Source: Salpingoeca rosetta (lineage: Eukaryota; Protista; Choanoflagellata). Taken from it: 64,000 nt of DNA. The notes beneath the pieces are model-generated. The model had not been told where the DNA came from and did no database searches. It worked only from the letters and a program-made list of their open reading frames with translations. Positions 47,501 through 57,982 of the stretch are shown here, piece after piece; the first letter of the stretch is position 1; each line of letters begins with the position of its first letter. The position numbers and the translations under genes are program-made. The DNA lies in the NCBI GenBank assembly GCA_033442325.1, contig JAWQFM010000009.1, positions 1,736,351 through 1,800,350 on the forward strand, in the 5' to 3' direction.

Positions 47501-48836
47501 ACACACAAACACACAGACACAGACACACGTGTGCGTGTTACCTGGTATTCCGGATCGTCATTGACGATGAGTTCTTCCACAAGACCGCGCACAGCCACAA
47601 TCTTGTAGCACTACAGATGCGCCGCAAATGGGCAGGCAGGTGAGGTTACAAGCAAGCCCGTCGCCAGAACACACACACACACACATGCACACACGCACAC
47701 ACACATACACCTCACACACACATTCTCTGTCTCTCTGTCTCTCTGTCTCTCTGTCTCTCTCTCACTCTCTGTCTACCTTTGGGACGGCCATGGTGGAGAA
47801 GAAGGACACGCCCACGGACGTGTCTCTGTACTTGTGATGGTTTCTGCAGTGCCACCAGCCATGGCACAGGCGCAACAGGACCGTGCAAGGAAGGGGGTGA
47901 GTGACCAAGGCTTGGAGACGGCGAACTTCATATGTGTGTGTGTGTGTGTTTGTGTGTGTGTGTGGTAGCAGCAGGGATGGACAAAAACGTAGTCCATTAC
48001 TGACTTGAAGAGATCGACTTTGACGGTGACGGCGACAGAACCGCGAACTCCTTTTAGCGTGTCGTAGATGGGGAACCATCCACTTATCTGCACGTTCGAA
48101 AACACGCACCCTTTTTGATGAGCAAATCCAACAGCTGCCCCCCCCCCCATACACACAGCGGGTGTTCCGCTTGCATCAAACATGGGATGATTTAACCCAC
48201 CTGTGAGCCGTTGTAGGGCCCAAGTGGCATCAGGTCGATGATCACCTGCACAAGAACACCAACACCACATGCCCACAAACACCACGAAGCGCATGTTCAC
48301 ACCAACATCAGCAACAGCTGCAGGTACGCACAAAGCGCGTGTGCCGCTTGTTTTCAAGTTCAGTGAGTGCCATGCAACCGCATCTCATGGATACAGGAAC
48401 ACAAGCATGAAATCGTCCACGCACCTGGCCGATGACATCGTCTGTGCCGATGCGGTCGTGATCCCAGACGTTGATCTGAATGATGGTGGTAAGCAAGGCG
48501 CAGGCACAATCGTCAGCCACTGTGAGCAGCAAGAACTGGCACGTCGCTCGCCCATTCGGTGTATGACATCACAGGAAGTGAAGCAGCAGTTGCAAGTGGA
48601 AAGCAAGCACGTCGCTGTTGCATTACCTCCAGCACTTCGTCCTGGATGTCTTCGTCATCGACCTCCAACCGAAAGTCCTCGTTCCACACCGGGTTCAGTG
48701 TTTTCTTGACCGTCTGCGTCTTGCGCGTGAGCGTGTGGAACTTGACCTCGACGTACGCATCCGTCAGCTGTGTGGACGAGTCCATCACGGGGAGGTCCCG
48801 TGCCTCGTGCACCTGCACCTTCAGGATCGCCGGCAT
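39546..48836 (-). CDS. C2CD5: C2 domain-containing protein 5 (CDP138), many exons
   Basis: MPAILKVQVHEARDLPVMDSSTQLTDAYVEVKF, ISGWFPIYDTLKGVRG, GLVEELIVNDDPEYQ, ANAVIGYRQLFDLEGDSGLVARGIGTA, WWSELRTEV, ARAHVRSRGGNALIG. Confidence 0.93.
44083..44199 (+). repeat. (CAT)n intronic microsatellite
   Basis: Directly visible. Confidence 0.95.
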
Positions 48837-49097: not shown

Positions 49098-50023
49098 TCA
49101 CTGGTCTTGCATGTGGTCGTTGTCGTCATCGTCGAGAGCAGCCATGATGCTCTCCATCACTCCATACAGCCTGCCAGCACAAAGAAAAGAGGGAAGAGAT
49201 GAAATGGGCGGCGTGTGAGGTGAGGTGTTCTGGTGGCAGATGCAACACATATGCAGTGCGCAACGGGGACACGCACCGCACAACAAAACACGCACGACAT
49301 GGCATCCAAACAATAAATTCTTGACCCTTCAGCACGCATGAAACGCACTCGCTGTTTGAAATGTCGTCCTGTGCGCACGCGCGCGCGCAAATCATGCAAA
49401 AGGCGGGGAAAGAGCAAGCAGTGGGACATGTAGTGTGAGATGTGAAACACACAGGCAGCCGTTCACGAAACCGAGCAACGCATACAGAGGGCACTGAAAA
49501 TACATACACACATACACATACACAGAAGTTGTGGCAATAACAGGACCACCACCACCACCACAATCAGCACACCTCGTCGTTGTCCATGGCGTCATGGTAC
49601 TGCTGTTGATGCGCATGATATTGGTCGCCACCGTCGTCGTGGCGATAAGCGGCCGGGCCAGCAGTATCAACGCTCACGTGCGGCTGTGCACTGAGGAGGC
49701 GCTGGCTCGCGTCCACCGTCGCTTGGAACGTGAGCACATTCCCAGTCACTTCGCACCACAGCGGTGGCGGCGATGGGGATGGCGTGTCATCTGGCGTGGG
49801 TGCCCCGGCCATATTGGACAGGGCGACAGCAGCGGCGACGACGGCTCTGTTGTGCACAGCAGCGGCCGTCTCGGGTCCCGTGCGCATCTCCACCCGCGGC
49901 AGCTGGCAATTGAAGAGGGGACAGGGTGGAGATGGATGTGTCAGCTGCGCGATTATTTGGTTGTATTAACCGCAGCGCACGCAACACCTCAAAGTAAACA
50001 CACACACACACACACACGCACAC

Positions 50024-50099
<76 letters not shown>

Positions 50100-51078
50100 C
50101 ACAACACAACACACCTCGAGGTCTGCGAAGAAAGGGTGTGTGGTGAGCGGGGAGAAGCCGAGCATGGCTACGTCTTCAGGGAGGGCGTTGGCCTGAAGCA
50201 GCAACAGCGGCAGTTGCGTATGAGAGGTGGTGGCAAGATGCGGGTTGTGTCTGCGCGCGCATGTGTGTGTGTGTGTGTGTGTGCGCGTGTGCGTCTGTGT
50301 ATCTGTGTGTGCATGGGCAACAGCTTACCGATGGCTGCCGCCACTGCATGAGGGCCTCTGGTTGCGGTGGTGTGTGCTGTGCATGGCGAGTCGCCAGCGA
50401 AGCAAACGCCTTCCAGAACCTGAAGACAATGAAGCAATGACATAAGACCAGTCAATGAAGCAGTGGCAATTGTCGTGCAAACCGGTATGAGCAGACACGC
50501 AATGCAAAACAAAGGTGCGCGGTCAAAGAAGCAGCAGTTGCGACTCTCGGATGTGCGGTTGCGTGCGTGCGTGTGTGTGTGCGTGCGTGCGTGCGTGGGT
50601 GTTGTGGGCCAATACGTGTGTGTGATGTGCAGGGAAGAGTGAGGCGCTGCGGGGTCATCGCTGCTGCATCGAAGGAGTGGAACTACAGCACGTGCGTTGG
50701 CCTGCAACCAGTTGCTCGCAATCTGCCAGCAGTTGGCGCCAAGTGCAGGAGCATGAAATCGACAAAGTTGCGATGAGGTGCACGATTTCAACACCTAGGT
50801 GCTGCTTGCACTCACAATGACCGCAATTGCACACAGCCACCAATCCGCCAGTTGGTACAGTGCATCAGCAGTAGTGCATGCCAACACCACCTTGATTGGG
50901 CCCAGGGTGCACGCGGTGGACATCTCAGCCTCGAGCGAGACCTGACGGCGGGGCATGGTGGCGGCGACAAACGACGTGAGGCAACGAGGTGTTGGCAGCA
51001 GGCATGCGCAGGGAGAAAGCGCACACACGCACCACGAAGGCAGACACACATGCACCACGAAAGCAGAAGCACACGCAC

Positions 51079-51123
<45 letters not shown>

Positions 51124-52130
51124 TAGACAGACAGACAAACGAATGTACGCACACACACACACCAAACGCTCCTCTCCTCTTCCCAAATGCGACGTACGAA
51201 GACGTTGACGAGGTCGAACAAGAGCTCAAGGGCGGTGCAGAATCGGTCTGGTGCATTCGCGCGCGTGTGTTCAACAGAAAACAGCGAGTACGAGAGCAGC
51301 TGCAGTGGCAGCATCGTGTTGGTGCTCGGATCGTTGTCGGCGGTGGCACATGCAACAGGTGGCTGCTGCTGTGCAGTGTGGGGGTGGTTGCGCAGTGCGC
51401 ACTGCTTGATAATGCGGGCGAGACGCGTGAACACACGCGCGTTTGCCGGCCGCCACGCCCGCCATAAAAGGCCATCGAATCCTGCAAAGAAGGCAAGTAG
51501 CGTTAGGTGGTGTCTGCATCACATGCACTGTCATTGAGATCACGATGCCTTGCCTCATGTTGTGCGTACTCTGTGCGTGCACGTGCAAGTTACAAATCAG
51601 GCAGCCACCCACGAAACCGCACACACACACATATGCATGCACGTACATGCACACACACATGCACGTACCTTTGTTGAAGAAGAGGCAGGTGTGGAGATAG
51701 GCAAACTGGTGAAGAACAGTGTGCATGTGCGCAGCCGTCAAGTCTTTTGTGCGCGAGTGCGTGTTTTGCTTCGCTGCACGTGTGTCGCCGCGCTGGCCGG
51801 GGAGAAGGCGGCGGGGGCGACCAGGCAAATCACCATTGCCACCGCCATTGCCACCGCCATCATCATCGCCATCATCATCATCATCATCCTCATCTTCATC
51901 ATCATCATCTGATTCGCTCATGTTCACATCATCGTCATCGTCATTGTCATCGTCCTCGTCATCCACAATGTCCTGGGCCGTGTCCTGTGCGCAGCGCAGC
52001 GGCATGCACAGTGGTTGCCAGTTGCCAGTGAGCACACCGCCACGCTGGGTCGCGCACAGCTCAGACTGGCGCTACAGCCCCACATACACGACAGGTGTGG
52101 AACACACGTTCACACACACAGGTTCACACA

Positions 52131-52162
<32 letters not shown>

Positions 52163-52176
52163 CATACGTTCACACA

Positions 52177-52228
<52 letters not shown>

Positions 52229-52442
52229 TTCCCGACATCATTACACAATCCCTGCGCCGGCCCCACGGTGCTGCACTGACTGCGATGATGCGGAAGAGCT
52301 TGGTGAGGTTTTCAACGGGGCTGGAGAACGACTCACGCGCACACAGGTTGCGGATGTAATAGTACCCTGACCGTGGCGGTCGCAATGGTGGCGGTGTGGT
52401 GGCTGTTGGTTGAGTGCGAGTGTGACAGGAAGTACAAAGCTG

Positions 52443-52500
<58 letters not shown>

Positions 52501-53117
52501 TGCGCTCAGCACACGCGCGCTGCACCTGCTGTGAAGAAGTCGCGATCGTACGTAACGAGGACAGCGAGCTGGTTGTATGCGGACCCGTTGCCTGGAAGCA
52601 TGTGCAGGGCTGACGTGTAATGACGACGCGCAACACCAAACTGCACCGCTTTCTCGTCCACGCCCGCACCGCCCGTGCTCTGCAAACACACACGCACACG
52701 CACACAATGCACAATGCACAATGCACAATGCACAATGCACAATGCACAAATTAGTCCGTGGCTTGGCAAGAATGCCTCAGGCAACTCACTTCCCTCCACC
52801 ATCGCCACCACGTCGCTACCATCCCGTTGCCACCACCACGTTGTCACCGCCACCGCCACCATCACCACTGTTGCAACCCCGTACACCTCCCCTCACCCCA
52901 CCTGCTTCTTCCGCGCCCTGGCGGCGGCCTGGCCCGCGTATCGAGCGAGATCGCCCGCGTGGATGAGCGACGAGTGCACTATCAGCAGCGCAGCGTGCGA
53001 GGATGCATTCACAGGGCTGTCCCATCATGGCGCGATGGCACGATGTGGTGGTGGTGGTGATGATGATGAGTCACGCGAGCTAACCTCAGCGGCACCCTCA
53101 TGTGCCACGCAGAGACA

Positions 53118-53193
<76 letters not shown>

Positions 53194-53419
53194 CAGCCTT
53201 TTGGCTGAACGTGAGAGGTGGGGCTGACCGTGGGAAGTGGGGCATGTTCTGCTGCGTAAATCCGAACGGAAGCGCCGGCGGCGTCGTGGGTACGAGGTGA
53301 AAGCACTGCTGTAGCTGATGCACGAAACTGAAACAGCACCAAGCATGACGAGGTGGTGTGATGGATGAGCTGCTCATGGCAACAGGAATGCACCAAGCTC
53401 AGCAGGAGTGTGCATGTGT

Positions 53420-53464
<45 letters not shown>

Positions 53465-54599
53465 CATCTGTCTCGACACCCACGACGGTCTCATCACAAC
53501 ACCGCATGACGCACTTGATGTAGAATCCCGCGCCCTCAGCCAAGATCAGCTGGAAGTCCGGCGTCAGGTCTGCACGCGTCACAACACACGATGCTGAGAA
53601 GTTAGCAAGTGCCCACATGGCACTGACATTTCCAACACGGATGGACACAAACACATGTAACGTACAAAAACCGAGCACGACGAACAGCACATACACACAC
53701 ACACACACACACAAGCATGCACACACACAAACACACACACACACACAAGCATGCACACACACAAACATGCACACACATACACAAGCACGCACCGTCAGTC
53801 TCCTTTGGGTTGCGGCTGCGGCGCTGTCGGTAAAACTCCACCAACTTGTAGAACCCAACGCGCCACAACAGCTCAGGCTGGACAGGACGTACAGGATACA
53901 AGCGCAGGCGCAGGCGCATGCGTGAGCATGAGTACTTGTGCAAGCGCGCACGAGCACAAGTGTGGCGTGTTGACAGTGTTAAAACACCCCACACACCCAC
54001 AGACACACGGACACACGACGTACAAACACACAGCACTCGCATACATTCATATACACACAAGCAACAAGCACACGCCCCTCACCAAGGCCTTCTCGACGGC
54101 GAGCTGCGGGGCAGAGAGGATCGCCTGCTGACATTGGAAGCGGAACGCACGGATGCGCGGGAAAATCTCCGTGCGGTAGTCTGCATCCGCCAGCTTCCTT
54201 GGCGTCGCTTCCCCTACAGGTGCACACAAGAACACCAGTGAGTGTGTGTGTGTGTGTGTGAAATAAGCCGCATGGATGCTGGTGTGATGTTGCACGGCCA
54301 TTTTGGTTTCCAGCGAGAAAGCTGGGCTTCGCCATCTCACATGCGTATCCACGTGGCATTGCACACAGAGGCAAACATACACACACACATACACGTACAA
54401 CTGTGCACCTTTGAGGGCTTCAGCAGCATTCACGGCGTCTCTGAAATCCAGCACAAAGCAAACACGCCATCAATGCAAGCAGTTCAAACGAGCGAGGGAA
54501 ACCTTCATGTGTATGACCACGCGGACACTGCCCAGCTCAACCACTGCAAATAAAGCGCTTCCCTCCATCGTCATTCACGCACTCGATGACAGACGACAT
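49098..54599 (-). CDS. EST1/SMG5-6-7 family NMD factor; no PIN domain seen, so SMG7-like
   Basis: [79 protein letters not shown] are hallmarks of the EST1/EST1_DNA_bind domain. First exon MSSVIE is followed by a GTGCGT donor at 54582 and a TTTCAG acceptor at 54441. Last exon ...DHMQDQ* is inferred. Confidence 0.85.
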
Positions 54600-54605
54600 G
54601 GCTCT

Positions 54606-54839
54606 TCAGTTGTTGGAAGTAGAAGATGATGAGGCGGCCTGGTCCAACAGGGCTTGATTAGCGGCCTTCTCTGCTTCCAGCTCTGCCCGGCGCCGCTCAA
54701 ACTTCTCAACAGCGTCGTCCTTGCATCGCGCACAACCACGGCAATGCACGTGAGCGTGAGCTCAGCAGAAAAACAACACTCTGTCCATAAAGCTGCTGCA
54801 TTCACCCGTGTTCACACACGCACACAGACAGACAGACAG

Positions 54840-54909
<70 letters not shown>

Positions 54910-55022
54910 AGACTGACCAGGTACTGGTGGCGCTGCTCTTCCAAGAACTGAAAGCCGAAACCGCCGCCAATAAGGGTCCCAGCAAAGATGGCCAGCACCA
55001 AGACCGTCTTGTTCTTCGCCAT
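54606..55022 (-). CDS. 72-aa single-TM microprotein, 2 exons (55022-54918 and 54719-54606)
   Basis: MAKNKTVLVLAIFAGTLIGGGFGFQFLEEQRHQYL|DDAVEKFERRRAELEAEKAANQALLDQAASSSSTSNN*. Phase-0 GTCAGT...AAG intron filled with (GT)n; TM followed by a charged coiled-coil-like segment. Confidence 0.7.
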
Positions 55023-55307
55023 GAAGACCACCCAGTAAGCCACGCACAACACACAAGGCAAGAAGGCAAGCAAGCAAGCGGCAGCGAGCGAGCAGGTGAA
55101 GTTGGGAAAAATACACCAAGATATTGGTCATTTCTCGGCAACCTTTGGAGGAAGACGACAAACAAAACAAACATCACCACCACCTGCTGTGTCCTCGTCC
55201 ACACCTCCAGCCTCAACCCCGATCCATCAATTGATCCCCCCTCCCTTCATCCATCTGGACACGCGCGGTTTGACAGTAGAGACACGTGACAGAGCCCCCA
55301 AGCAAGG

Positions 55308-56012
55308 ATGCAGTCGCTGCGGGAAGCGCTGTTTCGCCGAAGCGAGGAGCCAGCTTCCTCCACATCGACAACGACAACGGACGGATCGTCATCGCCCGCA
55401 TCGTCGTCTTCAAGCGCACCGCACACGGGCAAGGAACAGGACGCCAAGCACAAGCCACATGCACAGGATGATGGAACCCATGCACAGTCACCCAAGAAGG
55501 CTACCCCGCGAGCCAAAGCCGTGCAGCAGGAGCAGCGCAGCAGATCAAGCTCCCTGTCCGCGATGTGGAGGAGGACCATTGGCTCCAGCGAACGGACGGA
55601 GCAGGAGGTGGCCCGGACCTTGCTGTCGCTCAACCCATTCACAGAGGTGCAACTCCTGATTCCAGACAGCGCATCTGTCACCAAGCTGCTCAAGCTGGAT
55701 GACCACCGCTTGCTCTCTGTGAGCGAGAACACGGCACAAGTCTGGAGCACAGACCACGCCCAGCTGCTCTCCACCCTGCAAAGCCACACACGACCCATCA
55801 CCTGCGCGGCGATGGTCCACAAGACAGTCGTCACCGCATCGCACGATGAGACCATCAGGCTATGGGATCCATCCTGCGGCGAGTGCAGAAACGTGAGTCA
55901 CATGGCGCCATCTGCCTTGTTGCGTGAGGGAGGATTGATTTGGTTCCTGTCGTTGGCTGCTGTACCTTTGATGTCATTCCAGCACGTGTTTGCATGCCTT
56001 CAGCGTGTGCGT

Positions 56013-56052
<40 letters not shown>

Positions 56053-57982
56053 TGTACGCTCACAAAACACGTTCACTTTCTGCCTATGGCGCACGTACAC
56101 CGACACGAAACATACCCGACGACGCGCACGCCAGACCATCTCCGTGCCGGACGACGTGATCCGGGTGCTGGCGCCCGTGAACGACACGACATTTTGCTGT
56201 GGCGGCCAGCAGCTGTATGTGTTCAGCTGCCACGGCAAACTCGTGGCAAAAGCGCCGCAAGAGAACCCGGACCTCGCCTTCCACACGCTGCTGGTGTTGC
56301 GCCGTAACCAGACCATATTGGGCGTCGTCACAGACTCGCACCAGATCTGGGAGATTGCGCTTGATGGAGAAGGGACACTGGCACCATATGTGAGCGGGGA
56401 CCACAGGGAACATGGCTCCATCTTAAAGCCGCGGCAACTCAAGCGCGACCACGAACGCCCCATCACGTGTCTTGCGGAAATCACCGAGAACCTGTTTGCA
56501 TCCGGCTGTAAGGACGGCTCCGTGTTTCTGTGGCTGGCGCGCTCGCTCACGCTGTGTAAGGTGCTGGTGAATGCCCCCGAGGTGTTTTACGATGAGGCAA
56601 CAAAGCTGTACACACGCTCCGTCAACTTTATTCTGCCGCTCCCAAACCAACACGCCGCCATCGCCCTCAAGAACGGCTTTCTCGTGGTGCGTGTGTATGT
56701 GTGTGTGTGTGCAGATGCAGTTGTGTGTGTGTGTGTGTGGGTAGACGCAGATGTGTGTGTCTGCGTCTGTGTCTGTGTGTCTCTGTGTATTTCTGTGTCT
56801 GTGTTTGCAGATGTACTTGTGTGCAGCTGCATAAATGACTGCTCACTTACCAACACATCATCACTCAATCAATGCACATGACAGGTGTCCATCCAAGATC
56901 GAACAGTATGTGCTGAGGTAAGCCCGTCCCATGTTGCCTTTGCATGTTGGTTTGCTCTGCTGCACTTGTGCTTTGCCATGACAAGGTCAACTATCATGCG
57001 TTGAACGCATACACACGCACGCACGAATGCACACACACGCACACACACACACACACCATCACACGCACACCATCGCACGCACATTCACATTCTCTGTCAA
57101 TCACAAACCACGCTCCCATTGCTGGTGATCAGGTGGAGGACGCACATCTGGGAGAAATCCACAAGATGGCCCTCATTCACAACGGCCACTTCCTCCTCAC
57201 ATGCAGCTCAGATGCAGTCAAGCTTTGGTGAGCCGTGTTGTGTCGTGCGGCGCACACAACAAATAACACAGCGAGATGCATGGACGTATGGATGCATGGA
57301 TGCATGTGTTTACTCACACGAAAACACACACACACACACACGCACGCACGCACACATGCACGGGTGCATGTTGTTGCAGGTGCATATCGCAGTTTGCGCT
57401 CAACGCAGCGCCGCGCTCTGGTGAACAAATGTGCAAATTGCTCGTACAGTCGCTGTCAACAGCAGAGAACCCACCACCGGGGCAGCAGCACACCACGCAC
57501 GACACAGGCGCCCTCCCTCGCCCCCTACGCAAGAACATGGGCACCCTCGACCCCCACAGGCCGCTGTGTATTGGCGAGATGAAGGTGCACGCGGACCCCA
57601 TCGCAGACTGCGAAACCATAAGCTCGTACATGTTCGCAACCTGCAGCTCAGAACAGGTGCGTTGCTGTGGACTGTGTTGTGCTTGTGTGTGTGTGTGTGT
57701 GAGTATATGTGTGTGTTTGTTTGTGCTTGTTTGTGTTTCTTTGTTTGTGTTTCTTTGCTTGTGTGCGTACACTTGCATGAAAGCGTGTGATCCTCATCTG
57801 TCACGTTTGTTTGGTGCACTCGCTATCCCATTTCAGCCCTCACCTTCCCTCTCCCCTCCTCACCTCACTGCCCCCCCCCCCCTCGGTCGCAGATGATTTG
57901 CTTGTGGAAGAACGGGGCGTATTCGTGGAGAAACGCAAACTTGCTGGCAACGCGCGAGCTCAAGGACTCGTTCAGATTTTAA
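55308..57982 (+). CDS. WDR41: WD40-repeat protein, WDR41-like
   Basis: NPFTEVQLL...[12 protein letters not shown]...[21 protein letters not shown] and C-terminal [10 protein letters not shown]...ICLWKNG match remembered WDR41 motifs (NPYTEL...LDDYRFAS; ILWKNG). Confidence 0.8.

What the first reader, a model, noticed from the sequence alone, without database searches (positions are those of the whole stretch)
54441..55022. Microprotein ORF stops 6 nt, in frame, before the ATG of an SMG7-like NMD factor: probable bicistronic/uORF autoregulatory locus
Seen on the - strand: ...AAC AAC TGA AGA GCC ATG TCG TCT GTC ATC GA|GTGCGT. The spliced 72-aa TM protein ends at 54606 and the EST1/SMG7-like CDS starts at 54599, leaving no room for a separate 3'UTR plus promoter. 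Known: stops upstream of exon junctions trigger NMD, and NMD-factor mRNAs are often NMD targets themselves. Inference: one transcript encodes a real microprotein whose termination exposes the SMG7-like mRNA to NMD (feedback), with the second ORF made by reinitiation or leaky scanning. Readthrough, or a weak AA|GTTTGA donor in exon 2 that is in phase with the 54441 acceptor, would give a membrane-anchored SMG7 fusion instead.
Basis: partly seen in the sequence, partly recalled or inferred. Interest (0 to 1): 0.75.

Follow-up and report, generated by a model that had tools for sequence, protein, structure and literature searches.

The report
Membrane microprotein gene abutting choanoflagellate SMG7
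In the choanoflagellate Salpingoeca rosetta a conserved 72-residue membrane protein gene ends six bases before the start codon of an SMG7-type RNA-decay factor, and a second choanoflagellate keeps the two joined, so they are very probably expressed as one unit, although a shared messenger RNA was not shown here.

Summary
The organism is Salpingoeca rosetta, and the window is identical to GCA_000188695.1 over this locus. On the minus strand a spliced 72-aa single-pass membrane ORF (public model PTSG_12247) stops at 54606. Six bases later, in frame, the ATG at 54599 opens a 17-nt first coding exon of a 707-aa EST1/SMG7-type gene. Both CDS are already in the public annotation.

New here: among 1.84 billion representative proteins, the small protein has one relative. 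It is the N-terminus of a 659-aa gene model of Barroeca monosierra, where it is fused to the orthologous SMG7-like protein. The membrane exon is the best-conserved piece of the locus (70% identity against 30-65%). So the small ORF is a selected coding sequence, and its linkage to SMG7 is conserved.

The microprotein ATG has a weak -3 base, the SMG7 ATG a strong one, and no AUG lies between them. This fits leaky scanning on a dicistronic mRNA.

It is a new member of a known kind. The scan noted other bicistronic candidates in this genome.

The parts
55023..55307 (.). 285-bp region between the microprotein ATG (minus strand) and the ATG of a divergent WD40 gene (plus strand). It is probably a shared bidirectional promoter plus both 5'UTRs. 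The last ~90 nt before the microprotein ATG are pyrimidine-rich and ATG-free.
   Evidence: upstream ATGs only at 55131 and beyond. The promoter role is inferred.
54918..55022 (-). Microprotein exon 1 (35 codons): start codon, MAKNK, and a Gly-rich transmembrane helix (TLIGGGFGFQ). The ATG context is tcttcATGg, with a pyrimidine at -3.
   Evidence: It is 70% identical to B. monosierra P0002 residues 8-40.
54720..54917 (-). Microprotein intron, 198 nt, GTCAGT...AAG, with a long (TG)n run. It contains three ATGs that splicing removes.
   Evidence: The intron is implied by the public 72-aa model.
54606..54719 (-). Microprotein exon 2 CDS (37 codons plus TGA at 54608-54606): an amphipathic helix and a Ser-rich tail. 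It has no ATG in any frame. In a dicistronic mRNA it is one 137-nt exon together with the spacer and SMG7-like exon 1.
54600..54605 (-). 6-nt spacer AGAGCC between the stop codon and the next start codon. It keeps the two ORFs in frame.
   Evidence: the public CDS coordinates.
54583..54599 (-). SMG7-like coding exon 1 (17 nt, MSSVIE, donor CGA|GTGCGT). The ATG context is agagccATGt, with G at -3.
54409..54440 (-). SMG7-like coding exon 2 (32 nt, [10 protein letters not shown]-). It follows a 142-nt intron with acceptor TTTCAG.
   Evidence: By my own recollection of the sequence, it resembles the start of human SMG7 (AEVLKA).
54083..54213 (-). SMG7-like coding exon 3 (131 nt, donor TTG|GTGAGG).
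   Evidence: tblastn match to P0002 residues 75-97.
49098..54599 (-). Whole SMG7-like CDS span (707 aa in the public model, at least a dozen exons). Pfam EST1 and EST1_DNA_bind; no PIN domain listed.

Best explanation
My best explanation is one transcription unit, driven from the 285-bp region shared with the divergent WD40 gene, that makes a spliced dicistronic mRNA. Its first cistron encodes a conserved 72-aa single-pass membrane protein. Its second cistron, 6 nt downstream, encodes the SMG7-type protein. Ribosomes reach the second start by leaky scanning. The first AUG has a pyrimidine at -3, the second has G at -3, and splicing leaves no other AUG in the 225 nt between them. Shown here: the geometry, the two public CDS models, protein-level conservation of the small ORF, and conserved linkage in a second species. 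Inferred: a single mRNA and leaky scanning. Ribosomes that do translate the microprotein terminate far upstream of many exon junctions. NMD sensitivity, and hence feedback on an NMD factor, is therefore possible, but it remains a hypothesis (about 0.3 if the mRNA is dicistronic).
For: The geometry and reading frames are. The public annotation has both CDS with the same ends, and the window is identical to that record. The SMG7-like first coding exon is only 17 nt and the upstream stop lies 6 nt away, so the SMG7-like 5'UTR must run into the microprotein CDS. The microprotein is single-copy in the genome. It shows a coding-type GC1/2/3 of 0.60/0.38/0.70, like the SMG7-like exons. Its only relative in 1.84e9 representatives is the N-terminus of B. 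monosierra gene8753 (library-wide E 6e-6; pairwise 54% identity over 48 aa, E 4e-17). That model carries EST1 and EST1_DNA_bind and aligns exon by exon with this locus. Exon 1 is 70% identical, against 30-65% for the SMG7-like exons. No AUG lies between the two starts in the spliced form, whereas the intron holds three. There are precedents. Leaky scanning has been shown in vivo for green-algal dicistrons with a weak ORF 1 context, few intervening AUGs and very short inter-ORF distances (PMC11291117). A two-microprotein mRNA is known in a choanoflagellate (PMC9681215). An earlier scan note reports one such spliced mRNA in this same genome (s1-440308).
Against: The absence of an internal AUG is weak evidence: P = 0.04 by base shuffling but 0.53 by codon shuffling. 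The genome is compact. Another same-strand pair of CDS here is 261 nt apart, so overlapping but separate mRNAs are conceivable. The B. monosierra model is a fusion, not two ORFs, and its DNA could not be fetched. That species may therefore truly make a fusion. I did not derive the Kozak preferences of S. rosetta; I assumed the general -3 purine rule.
Confidence: 0.55

Rival explanations
1. There are two overlapping but separate mRNAs. The SMG7-like mRNA starts at an internal promoter in the microprotein intron or exon 2. The microprotein mRNA is cleaved and polyadenylated inside the first SMG7-like intron(s).
For: The genome is compact: a same-strand neighbour sits 261 nt from the SMG7-like stop. 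The public annotation lists two separate genes. Exon 2 has no ATG, so an internal start site would still make 54599 the first AUG.
Against: I saw no AATAAA or ATTAAA in the 400 nt after the stop on the minus strand (read; the S. rosetta signal is unknown to me). A poly(A) site there would also truncate SMG7-like transcripts. Linkage tight enough for a gene predictor to fuse the two in B. monosierra is better explained by a shared unit.
Confidence: 0.2
2. The functional product, or one of them, is a membrane-anchored SMG7. The transmembrane exon would be joined in frame to the SMG7-like body by alternative splicing or by TGA readthrough in S. rosetta, and constitutively in B. monosierra.
For: P0002 of B. 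monosierra is exactly such a fusion. Its 16-residue linker (39-54) also resembles S. rosetta SMG7-like residues 2-17 in the colinear register (score 12, shuffle P 0.004). It has the length expected if the membrane exon were joined directly to the SMG7 N-terminus. In S. rosetta the stop is in frame with the ATG, and two in-phase donors exist.
Against: P0002 is a genome-derived model whose evidence is unknown. Its linker fits the start of microprotein exon 2 better (score 25, P 0.0002). That is the pattern expected if a predictor removed a stop, spacer, start and two tiny exons as an 'intron'. The S. rosetta donors GTTTGA and GTTGGA have T at +3, unlike the four used donors (GTCAGT, GTGCGT, GTGCAC, GTGAGG). 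UGA-A is not a known readthrough context (general knowledge). In S. rosetta, two lysines before the helix and acidic residues after it would put the C-terminus on the non-cytosolic side, which is wrong for an NMD factor (inference).
Confidence: 0.15
3. The small ORF matters only in cis, as a long regulatory uORF or a conserved-peptide uORF that throttles SMG7-like translation. Its peptide would have no function of its own.
For: Its position directly upstream of a regulator whose mRNA is feedback-controlled in other eukaryotes (PMC3711448; Yepiskoposyan 2011, listed as a reference in PMC6173133).
Against: The conserved part is the N-terminal transmembrane helix with a Gly-rich face (70% identity, invariant TLIGG and FGFQ). 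The C-terminus, which would sit in the exit tunnel at termination, is a low-complexity Ser/Asn tail in S. rosetta. Cis-only uORFs are rarely conserved as hydrophobic helices.
Confidence: 0.07

Closest known systems
Green-algal nuclear dicistronic loci translated by leaky scanning (Chlamydomonas, Auxenochlorella; PMC11291117)
   Same: A small first ORF that is often a membrane protein (e.g. TOM22, OST4). A weak ORF 1 start context, few or no AUGs before ORF 2, and inter-ORF distances down to a few bases.
   Different: The lineage is different (Holozoa). Here a shared mRNA is not yet shown, and the second cistron is an NMD factor.
sloth1/sloth2 (SMIM4/UQCC5 and BRAWNIN/UQCC6) bicistronic mRNA of animals and a choanoflagellate (PMC9681215)
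   Same: A conserved microprotein cistron on a shared mRNA in the choanoflagellate/animal lineage. The scan notes the same pair in S. rosetta (s1-440308).
   Different: There both cistrons are paralogous microproteins of one pathway. Here a 72-aa membrane protein precedes an unrelated 707-aa cytosolic-type factor.
Autoregulation of NMD factor mRNAs (human NMD factors; plant SMG7 through its 3'UTR, PMC3711448)
   Same: An SMG7 gene carrying a feature that should expose its own mRNA to NMD.
   Different: In the known cases the feature is a long or intron-containing 3'UTR or a short uORF. Here it would be a conserved protein-coding upstream cistron. No NMD dependence was tested here.
SMG7 (human, PDB 1YA0) within the SMG5/6/7-EST1 family
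   Same: EST1 and EST1_DNA_bind domains and no PIN domain listed. The B. monosierra orthologue's best solved relative is human SMG7 (E 1e-11), ahead of SMG6/EST1A.
   Different: It is much shorter than human SMG7 and has an acidic low-complexity insert. The phosphoserine-binding residues were not checked.
Small mitochondrial assembly factors (PET117, UQCC3, CBP4, DUF4748)
   Same: An N-terminal transmembrane helix followed by a charged helix, at about 70-80 aa. These are the nearest language-model neighbours at 0.78-0.80.
   Different: No Pfam, NCBIfam or PDB match. Atlas scores of 0.8 are at chance level by the tool's own statement.

Membership tests
SMG5/6/7-EST1 family, SMG7 type | EST1 (PF10374) plus EST1_DNA_bind (PF10373) TPR/14-3-3-like region | tested here: met
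   The public 707-aa product carries both domains. An exon-level PF10373 hit lies in the window's genome at C9:1788877-1788981. An exon 4 fragment hits EST1 weakly. The orthologue P0002 scores 1e-26 and 1e-6.
SMG5/6/7-EST1 family, SMG7 type | No C-terminal PIN domain; closest solved relative is SMG7 | tested here: met
   No PIN family is listed for the 707-aa product or for P0002. P0002's best PDB hit is 1YA0 SMG7, then 4UM2 SMG6.
SMG5/6/7-EST1 family, SMG7 type | Acts in NMD with UPF1 | not testable with these tools
   A UPF1 zinc-knuckle domain is present in the genome, as is a second EST1_DNA_bind locus. Exon-wise scans for UPF2, UPF3 and SMG1 were blank and uninformative.
Eukaryotic dicistronic mRNA read by leaky scanning | Both ORFs on one mature capped mRNA | not testable with these tools
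RNA runs exist (X21-X23 raw reads, X4-X11 contigs).
Eukaryotic dicistronic mRNA read by leaky scanning | Weak start context at ORF 1, stronger at ORF 2 | tested here: met
   tcttcATGg (T at -3) against agagccATGt (G at -3). The species' own consensus was not derived.
Eukaryotic dicistronic mRNA read by leaky scanning | No AUG between the two starts | tested here: met
   There are 0 internal ATGs in 225 spliced nt and three in the intron. The statistics are weak: P 0.04 by base shuffle and 0.53 by codon shuffle.
Eukaryotic dicistronic mRNA read by leaky scanning | Both ORFs and their linkage conserved in another species | tested here: met
   B. monosierra P0002 holds both parts in one model, in the same order.
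NMD autoregulatory circuit | Termination codon more than 50 nt upstream of exon junctions, or followed by a very long downstream region | tested here: met
   This holds only if the mRNA is dicistronic. The stop at 54606 is 23 nt from the first junction, 55 nt from the second, and upstream of all later junctions and about 2.1 kb of CDS.
NMD autoregulatory circuit | mRNA level rises when NMD or translation is blocked | not testable with these tools
   No such data set could be laid.
Conserved-peptide uORF (cis-acting nascent peptide) | Conservation concentrated at the C-terminal residues next to the stop | tested here: not met
   Conservation lies in residues 4-51, chiefly the N-terminal helix. 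The S. rosetta tail is SSSSTSNN.
PET117 / UQCC3 / CBP4 small mitochondrial assembly factors | Match to the family profile | tested here: not met
   No Pfam match at E up to 10, for the whole protein or per exon, in either species. These families are only Atlas neighbours at 0.78-0.80.

The most novel reading that the evidence does not exclude
In the S. rosetta / B. monosierra clade, SMG7 would be physically coupled to a membrane. This could be a true transmembrane-SMG7 fusion (B. monosierra), or a co-translated 72-aa anchor made from the same mRNA (S. rosetta). The upstream cistron would also make the SMG7 mRNA sense NMD activity. That would be a membrane-localised, self-limiting branch of NMD in the closest relatives of animals.
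Probability: 0.12. Interest if true: 0.75.

Novelty: new member of a known kind. Interest (0 to 1): 0.45.

Why it matters
Dicistronic nuclear mRNAs with a functional microprotein upstream of a large ORF are now known in algae, fungi, animals and one choanoflagellate. Few of them involve a regulator of mRNA decay. Here the partner is SMG7, and the small cistron is more conserved than SMG7 itself. If one mRNA is confirmed, the locus gives a genetically tractable organism (CRISPR works in S. rosetta) in which to ask two questions. How does a 72-codon upstream cistron coexist with NMD? And does an NMD factor use such a cistron to set its own level? It also warns that the fused B. monosierra model, and similar models elsewhere, may hide dicistronic loci.

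Tried and rejected
After that, no letters of 53680-53792 went to any search; scripts either masked them or read only the sequence on either side of them.

2. Family assignment of the microprotein. Pfam per exon and whole, NCBIfam, and a PDB profile gave only chance-level hits (MctB, the TOM70 anchor, coiled coils). The Atlas neighbours (PET117, UQCC3, CBP4, DUF4748) scored about 0.8, which is chance level. I rejected them as memberships.

3. Fetching B. monosierra DNA. There is no encoding contig on record, and two metagenome scans were blank.

4. Reaching the 707-aa S. rosetta protein or other choanoflagellate SMG7s by word search with P0002, whole and over region 190-290. Only the query itself came back. 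So there was no look-up of RNA-derived contigs and no test in Monosiga.

5. An alignment of P0002 with exon fragments (A2) was too scattered to use as a profile, and I dropped it.

6. It was handled exon by exon and through P0002.

7. Exon-wise scans for UPF2, UPF3 and SMG1 were blank and uninformative.

8. Complex prediction was not sent. The only usable SMG7 domain (P0002 55-330) may lack its first helix, so any amphipathic helix could dock there.

9. Paper searches found no description of PTSG_12247 or of natural polycistrons in S. rosetta. One search was wasted through a loose setting.

Full report
WHAT IS THERE. The ATG at 55022 opens 105 nt of coding sequence that ends at a CTG|GTCAGT donor. 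A 198-nt intron follows, carrying a long (TG)n run and ending in AAG. Then come 114 nt ending in TGA at 54608-54606. Joined, the two exons give 72 aa. Six bases later and in frame, the ATG at 54599 opens a 17-nt coding exon (donor GTGCGT). After a 142-nt intron come a 32-nt exon and a 131-nt exon. Together they read [23 protein letters not shown]...LAVEKAL|[16 protein letters not shown], the start of an EST1/SMG7-type protein.

ORGANISM AND PUBLIC MODELS. A word search with exon 1 returned one protein, identical to the spliced 72-aa model: hypothetical protein PTSG_12247 of Salpingoeca rosetta. On GL832965.1 of GCA_000188695.1 this CDS is followed 6 nt later by a 707-aa CDS with Pfam EST1 and EST1_DNA_bind, which starts at the same ATG. 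A WD40 gene runs divergently from 55308, and the next same-strand CDS starts 261 nt after the SMG7-like stop. The window is identical to that record over the locus. No paper in the library mentions PTSG_12247.

IS THE SMALL ORF A REAL GENE? It is single-copy in the genome. Its GC1/2/3 is 0.60/0.38/0.70, like the neighbouring SMG7-like exons. It encodes an N-terminal transmembrane helix with a glycine-rich face, followed by a charged helix. It matches no Pfam, NCBIfam or PDB family. The Atlas neighbours (PET117, UQCC3, CBP4) are chance-level leads only.

An exhaustive HMMER search of 1.84 billion representatives found one relative (E 6e-6). It is a 659-aa EukProt model, gene8753 of the choanoflagellate Barroeca monosierra, described as closely related to S. 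rosetta (PMC11389367). Residues 7-54 of that model align without gaps to residues 4-51 of the microprotein (54% identity, pairwise E 4e-17). The rest of the model is an EST1/EST1_DNA_bind protein. Its best solved relative is human SMG7, and it aligns exon by exon with the S. rosetta gene. In that comparison the microprotein's first exon is the best-conserved piece of the whole locus: 70% identity, against 30-65% for the SMG7-like exons. The small ORF is therefore under protein-level selection, and its position directly upstream of SMG7 on the same strand is conserved.

WHAT THE FUSED MODEL MEANS. The B. monosierra proteome is genome-derived (PMC12716839), and its DNA could not be fetched. Relative to an S. 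rosetta read-through, the model lacks 41 residues. These are the microprotein tail, the stop, the spacer, and the 17 residues encoded by the two tiny SMG7-like exons. The model then resumes exactly at the exon 3 boundary, with the same split Gly codon. That is what a gene predictor would produce if it had to bridge a stop and two micro-exons, so an artefact hiding the same dicistronic layout is my preferred reading.

The matter is not settled. The 16-residue linker of the model resembles the start of microprotein exon 2 (score 25, shuffle P 0.0002). It also resembles, more weakly, SMG7-like residues 2-17 in the colinear register (score 12, P 0.004), and it has about the length expected for a direct join. 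A true membrane-anchored SMG7 in B. monosierra cannot be excluded.

HOW IT MOST LIKELY WORKS. The SMG7-like first coding exon is 17 nt long and the upstream stop is 6 nt away. Any normal 5'UTR must therefore run into the microprotein's coding exon, so the two genes overlap at the RNA level whatever the start site.

The simplest layout is one transcript from the 285-bp region shared with the WD40 gene. In it, 54719-54583 is an ordinary 137-nt internal exon. The first AUG has T at -3 (with G at +4), and the second has G at -3. After splicing, no other AUG remains between them, whereas the intron holds three. These are the conditions shown in vivo to allow leaky scanning on green-algal dicistrons, some of which have overlapping stop and start codons (PMC11291117). 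The lack of AUGs is weak evidence on its own (P 0.04 by base shuffle, 0.53 by codon shuffle).

Reinitiation after 72 codons with a 6-nt spacer is unlikely on general knowledge. Readthrough of UGA-A and the two in-phase donors (GTTTGA, GTTGGA, both with T at +3, unlike the four donors in use) look like minor routes at best.

THE NMD IDEA. If the mRNA is dicistronic, ribosomes ending at 54606 terminate 55 nt or more upstream of all but the first exon junction, and about 2.1 kb from the 3' end. That is a classical NMD trigger. NMD-factor mRNAs are feedback targets in humans and plants (PMC3711448; references in PMC6173133). The genome has UPF1 and a second SMG5/6/7-type locus. Nothing here tests whether this mRNA is NMD-sensitive, so the feedback remains a reasonable hypothesis and not a finding. 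A purely cis-acting peptide uORF is unlikely, because the conserved part is the N-terminal helix and not the C-terminus.

WHAT COULD NOT BE DONE. The decisive test, laying RNA reads, failed. The joined SMG7-like model was not searched as one sequence. It was treated exon by exon and through P0002.

VERDICT. The locus is a new, conserved member of a known kind (a eukaryotic dicistronic microprotein/main-ORF locus), and an open question remains about a membrane-SMG7 fusion. Other bicistronic candidates were noted by the scan elsewhere in this genome.

Noticed in passing
window 49119-49169 (-): The C-terminal motif L(Y/F)GVMESIM..LDD(D/E) of the SMG7-like protein is 65% identical between S. rosetta and B. 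monosierra, far above its surroundings. It may be a short linear binding motif at the extreme C-terminus.
   Followed up: no
window 54214-54408 (-): SMG7-like intron 2 (195 nt) is open in frame: the ORF 54047-54454 reads through exon 2, the intron and exon 3 without a stop. Retention of this intron would insert 65 residues and not truncate the protein.
   Followed up: no
window 54604-54630 (-): The Ser-rich tail of the microprotein is encoded by a pyrimidine tract (tcatcatcttctacttcc) followed by aacaactgaAG. This looks like a 3' splice site just before the SMG7-like ATG. Use of that AG from the exon 1 donor would be out of frame with the SMG7-like ORF.
   Followed up: partly
window 55308-57982 (+): A divergent 543-aa WD40 beta-propeller gene starts 285 bp from the microprotein ATG. 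The two probably share a bidirectional promoter.
   Followed up: no
window 48513-48836 (-): The next same-strand gene (1163 aa in the public model; the N-terminus looks like a C2 domain) starts only 261 nt after the SMG7-like stop. This shows how tightly genes are packed here.
   Followed up: no
window 51700-51920 (-): There is a long acidic low-complexity run (D/E with some G/N) inside the SMG7-like coding region. The matching part of the B. monosierra protein is not acidic to the same degree.
   Followed up: no
G000:C9:884532-884660 (-) and G000:C4:1269549-1270712 (-): There is a second EST1_DNA_bind locus (another SMG5/6/7-type gene) and the UPF1 zinc-knuckle region elsewhere in the genome.
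   Followed up: no
window-wide, e.g. 54830-54910, 54255-54275, 53100-53180: Nearly every intron read here holds a (TG)n/(CA)n microsatellite. These produce long spurious CVCVCV/THTHTH ORFs in the six-frame list.
   Followed up: no
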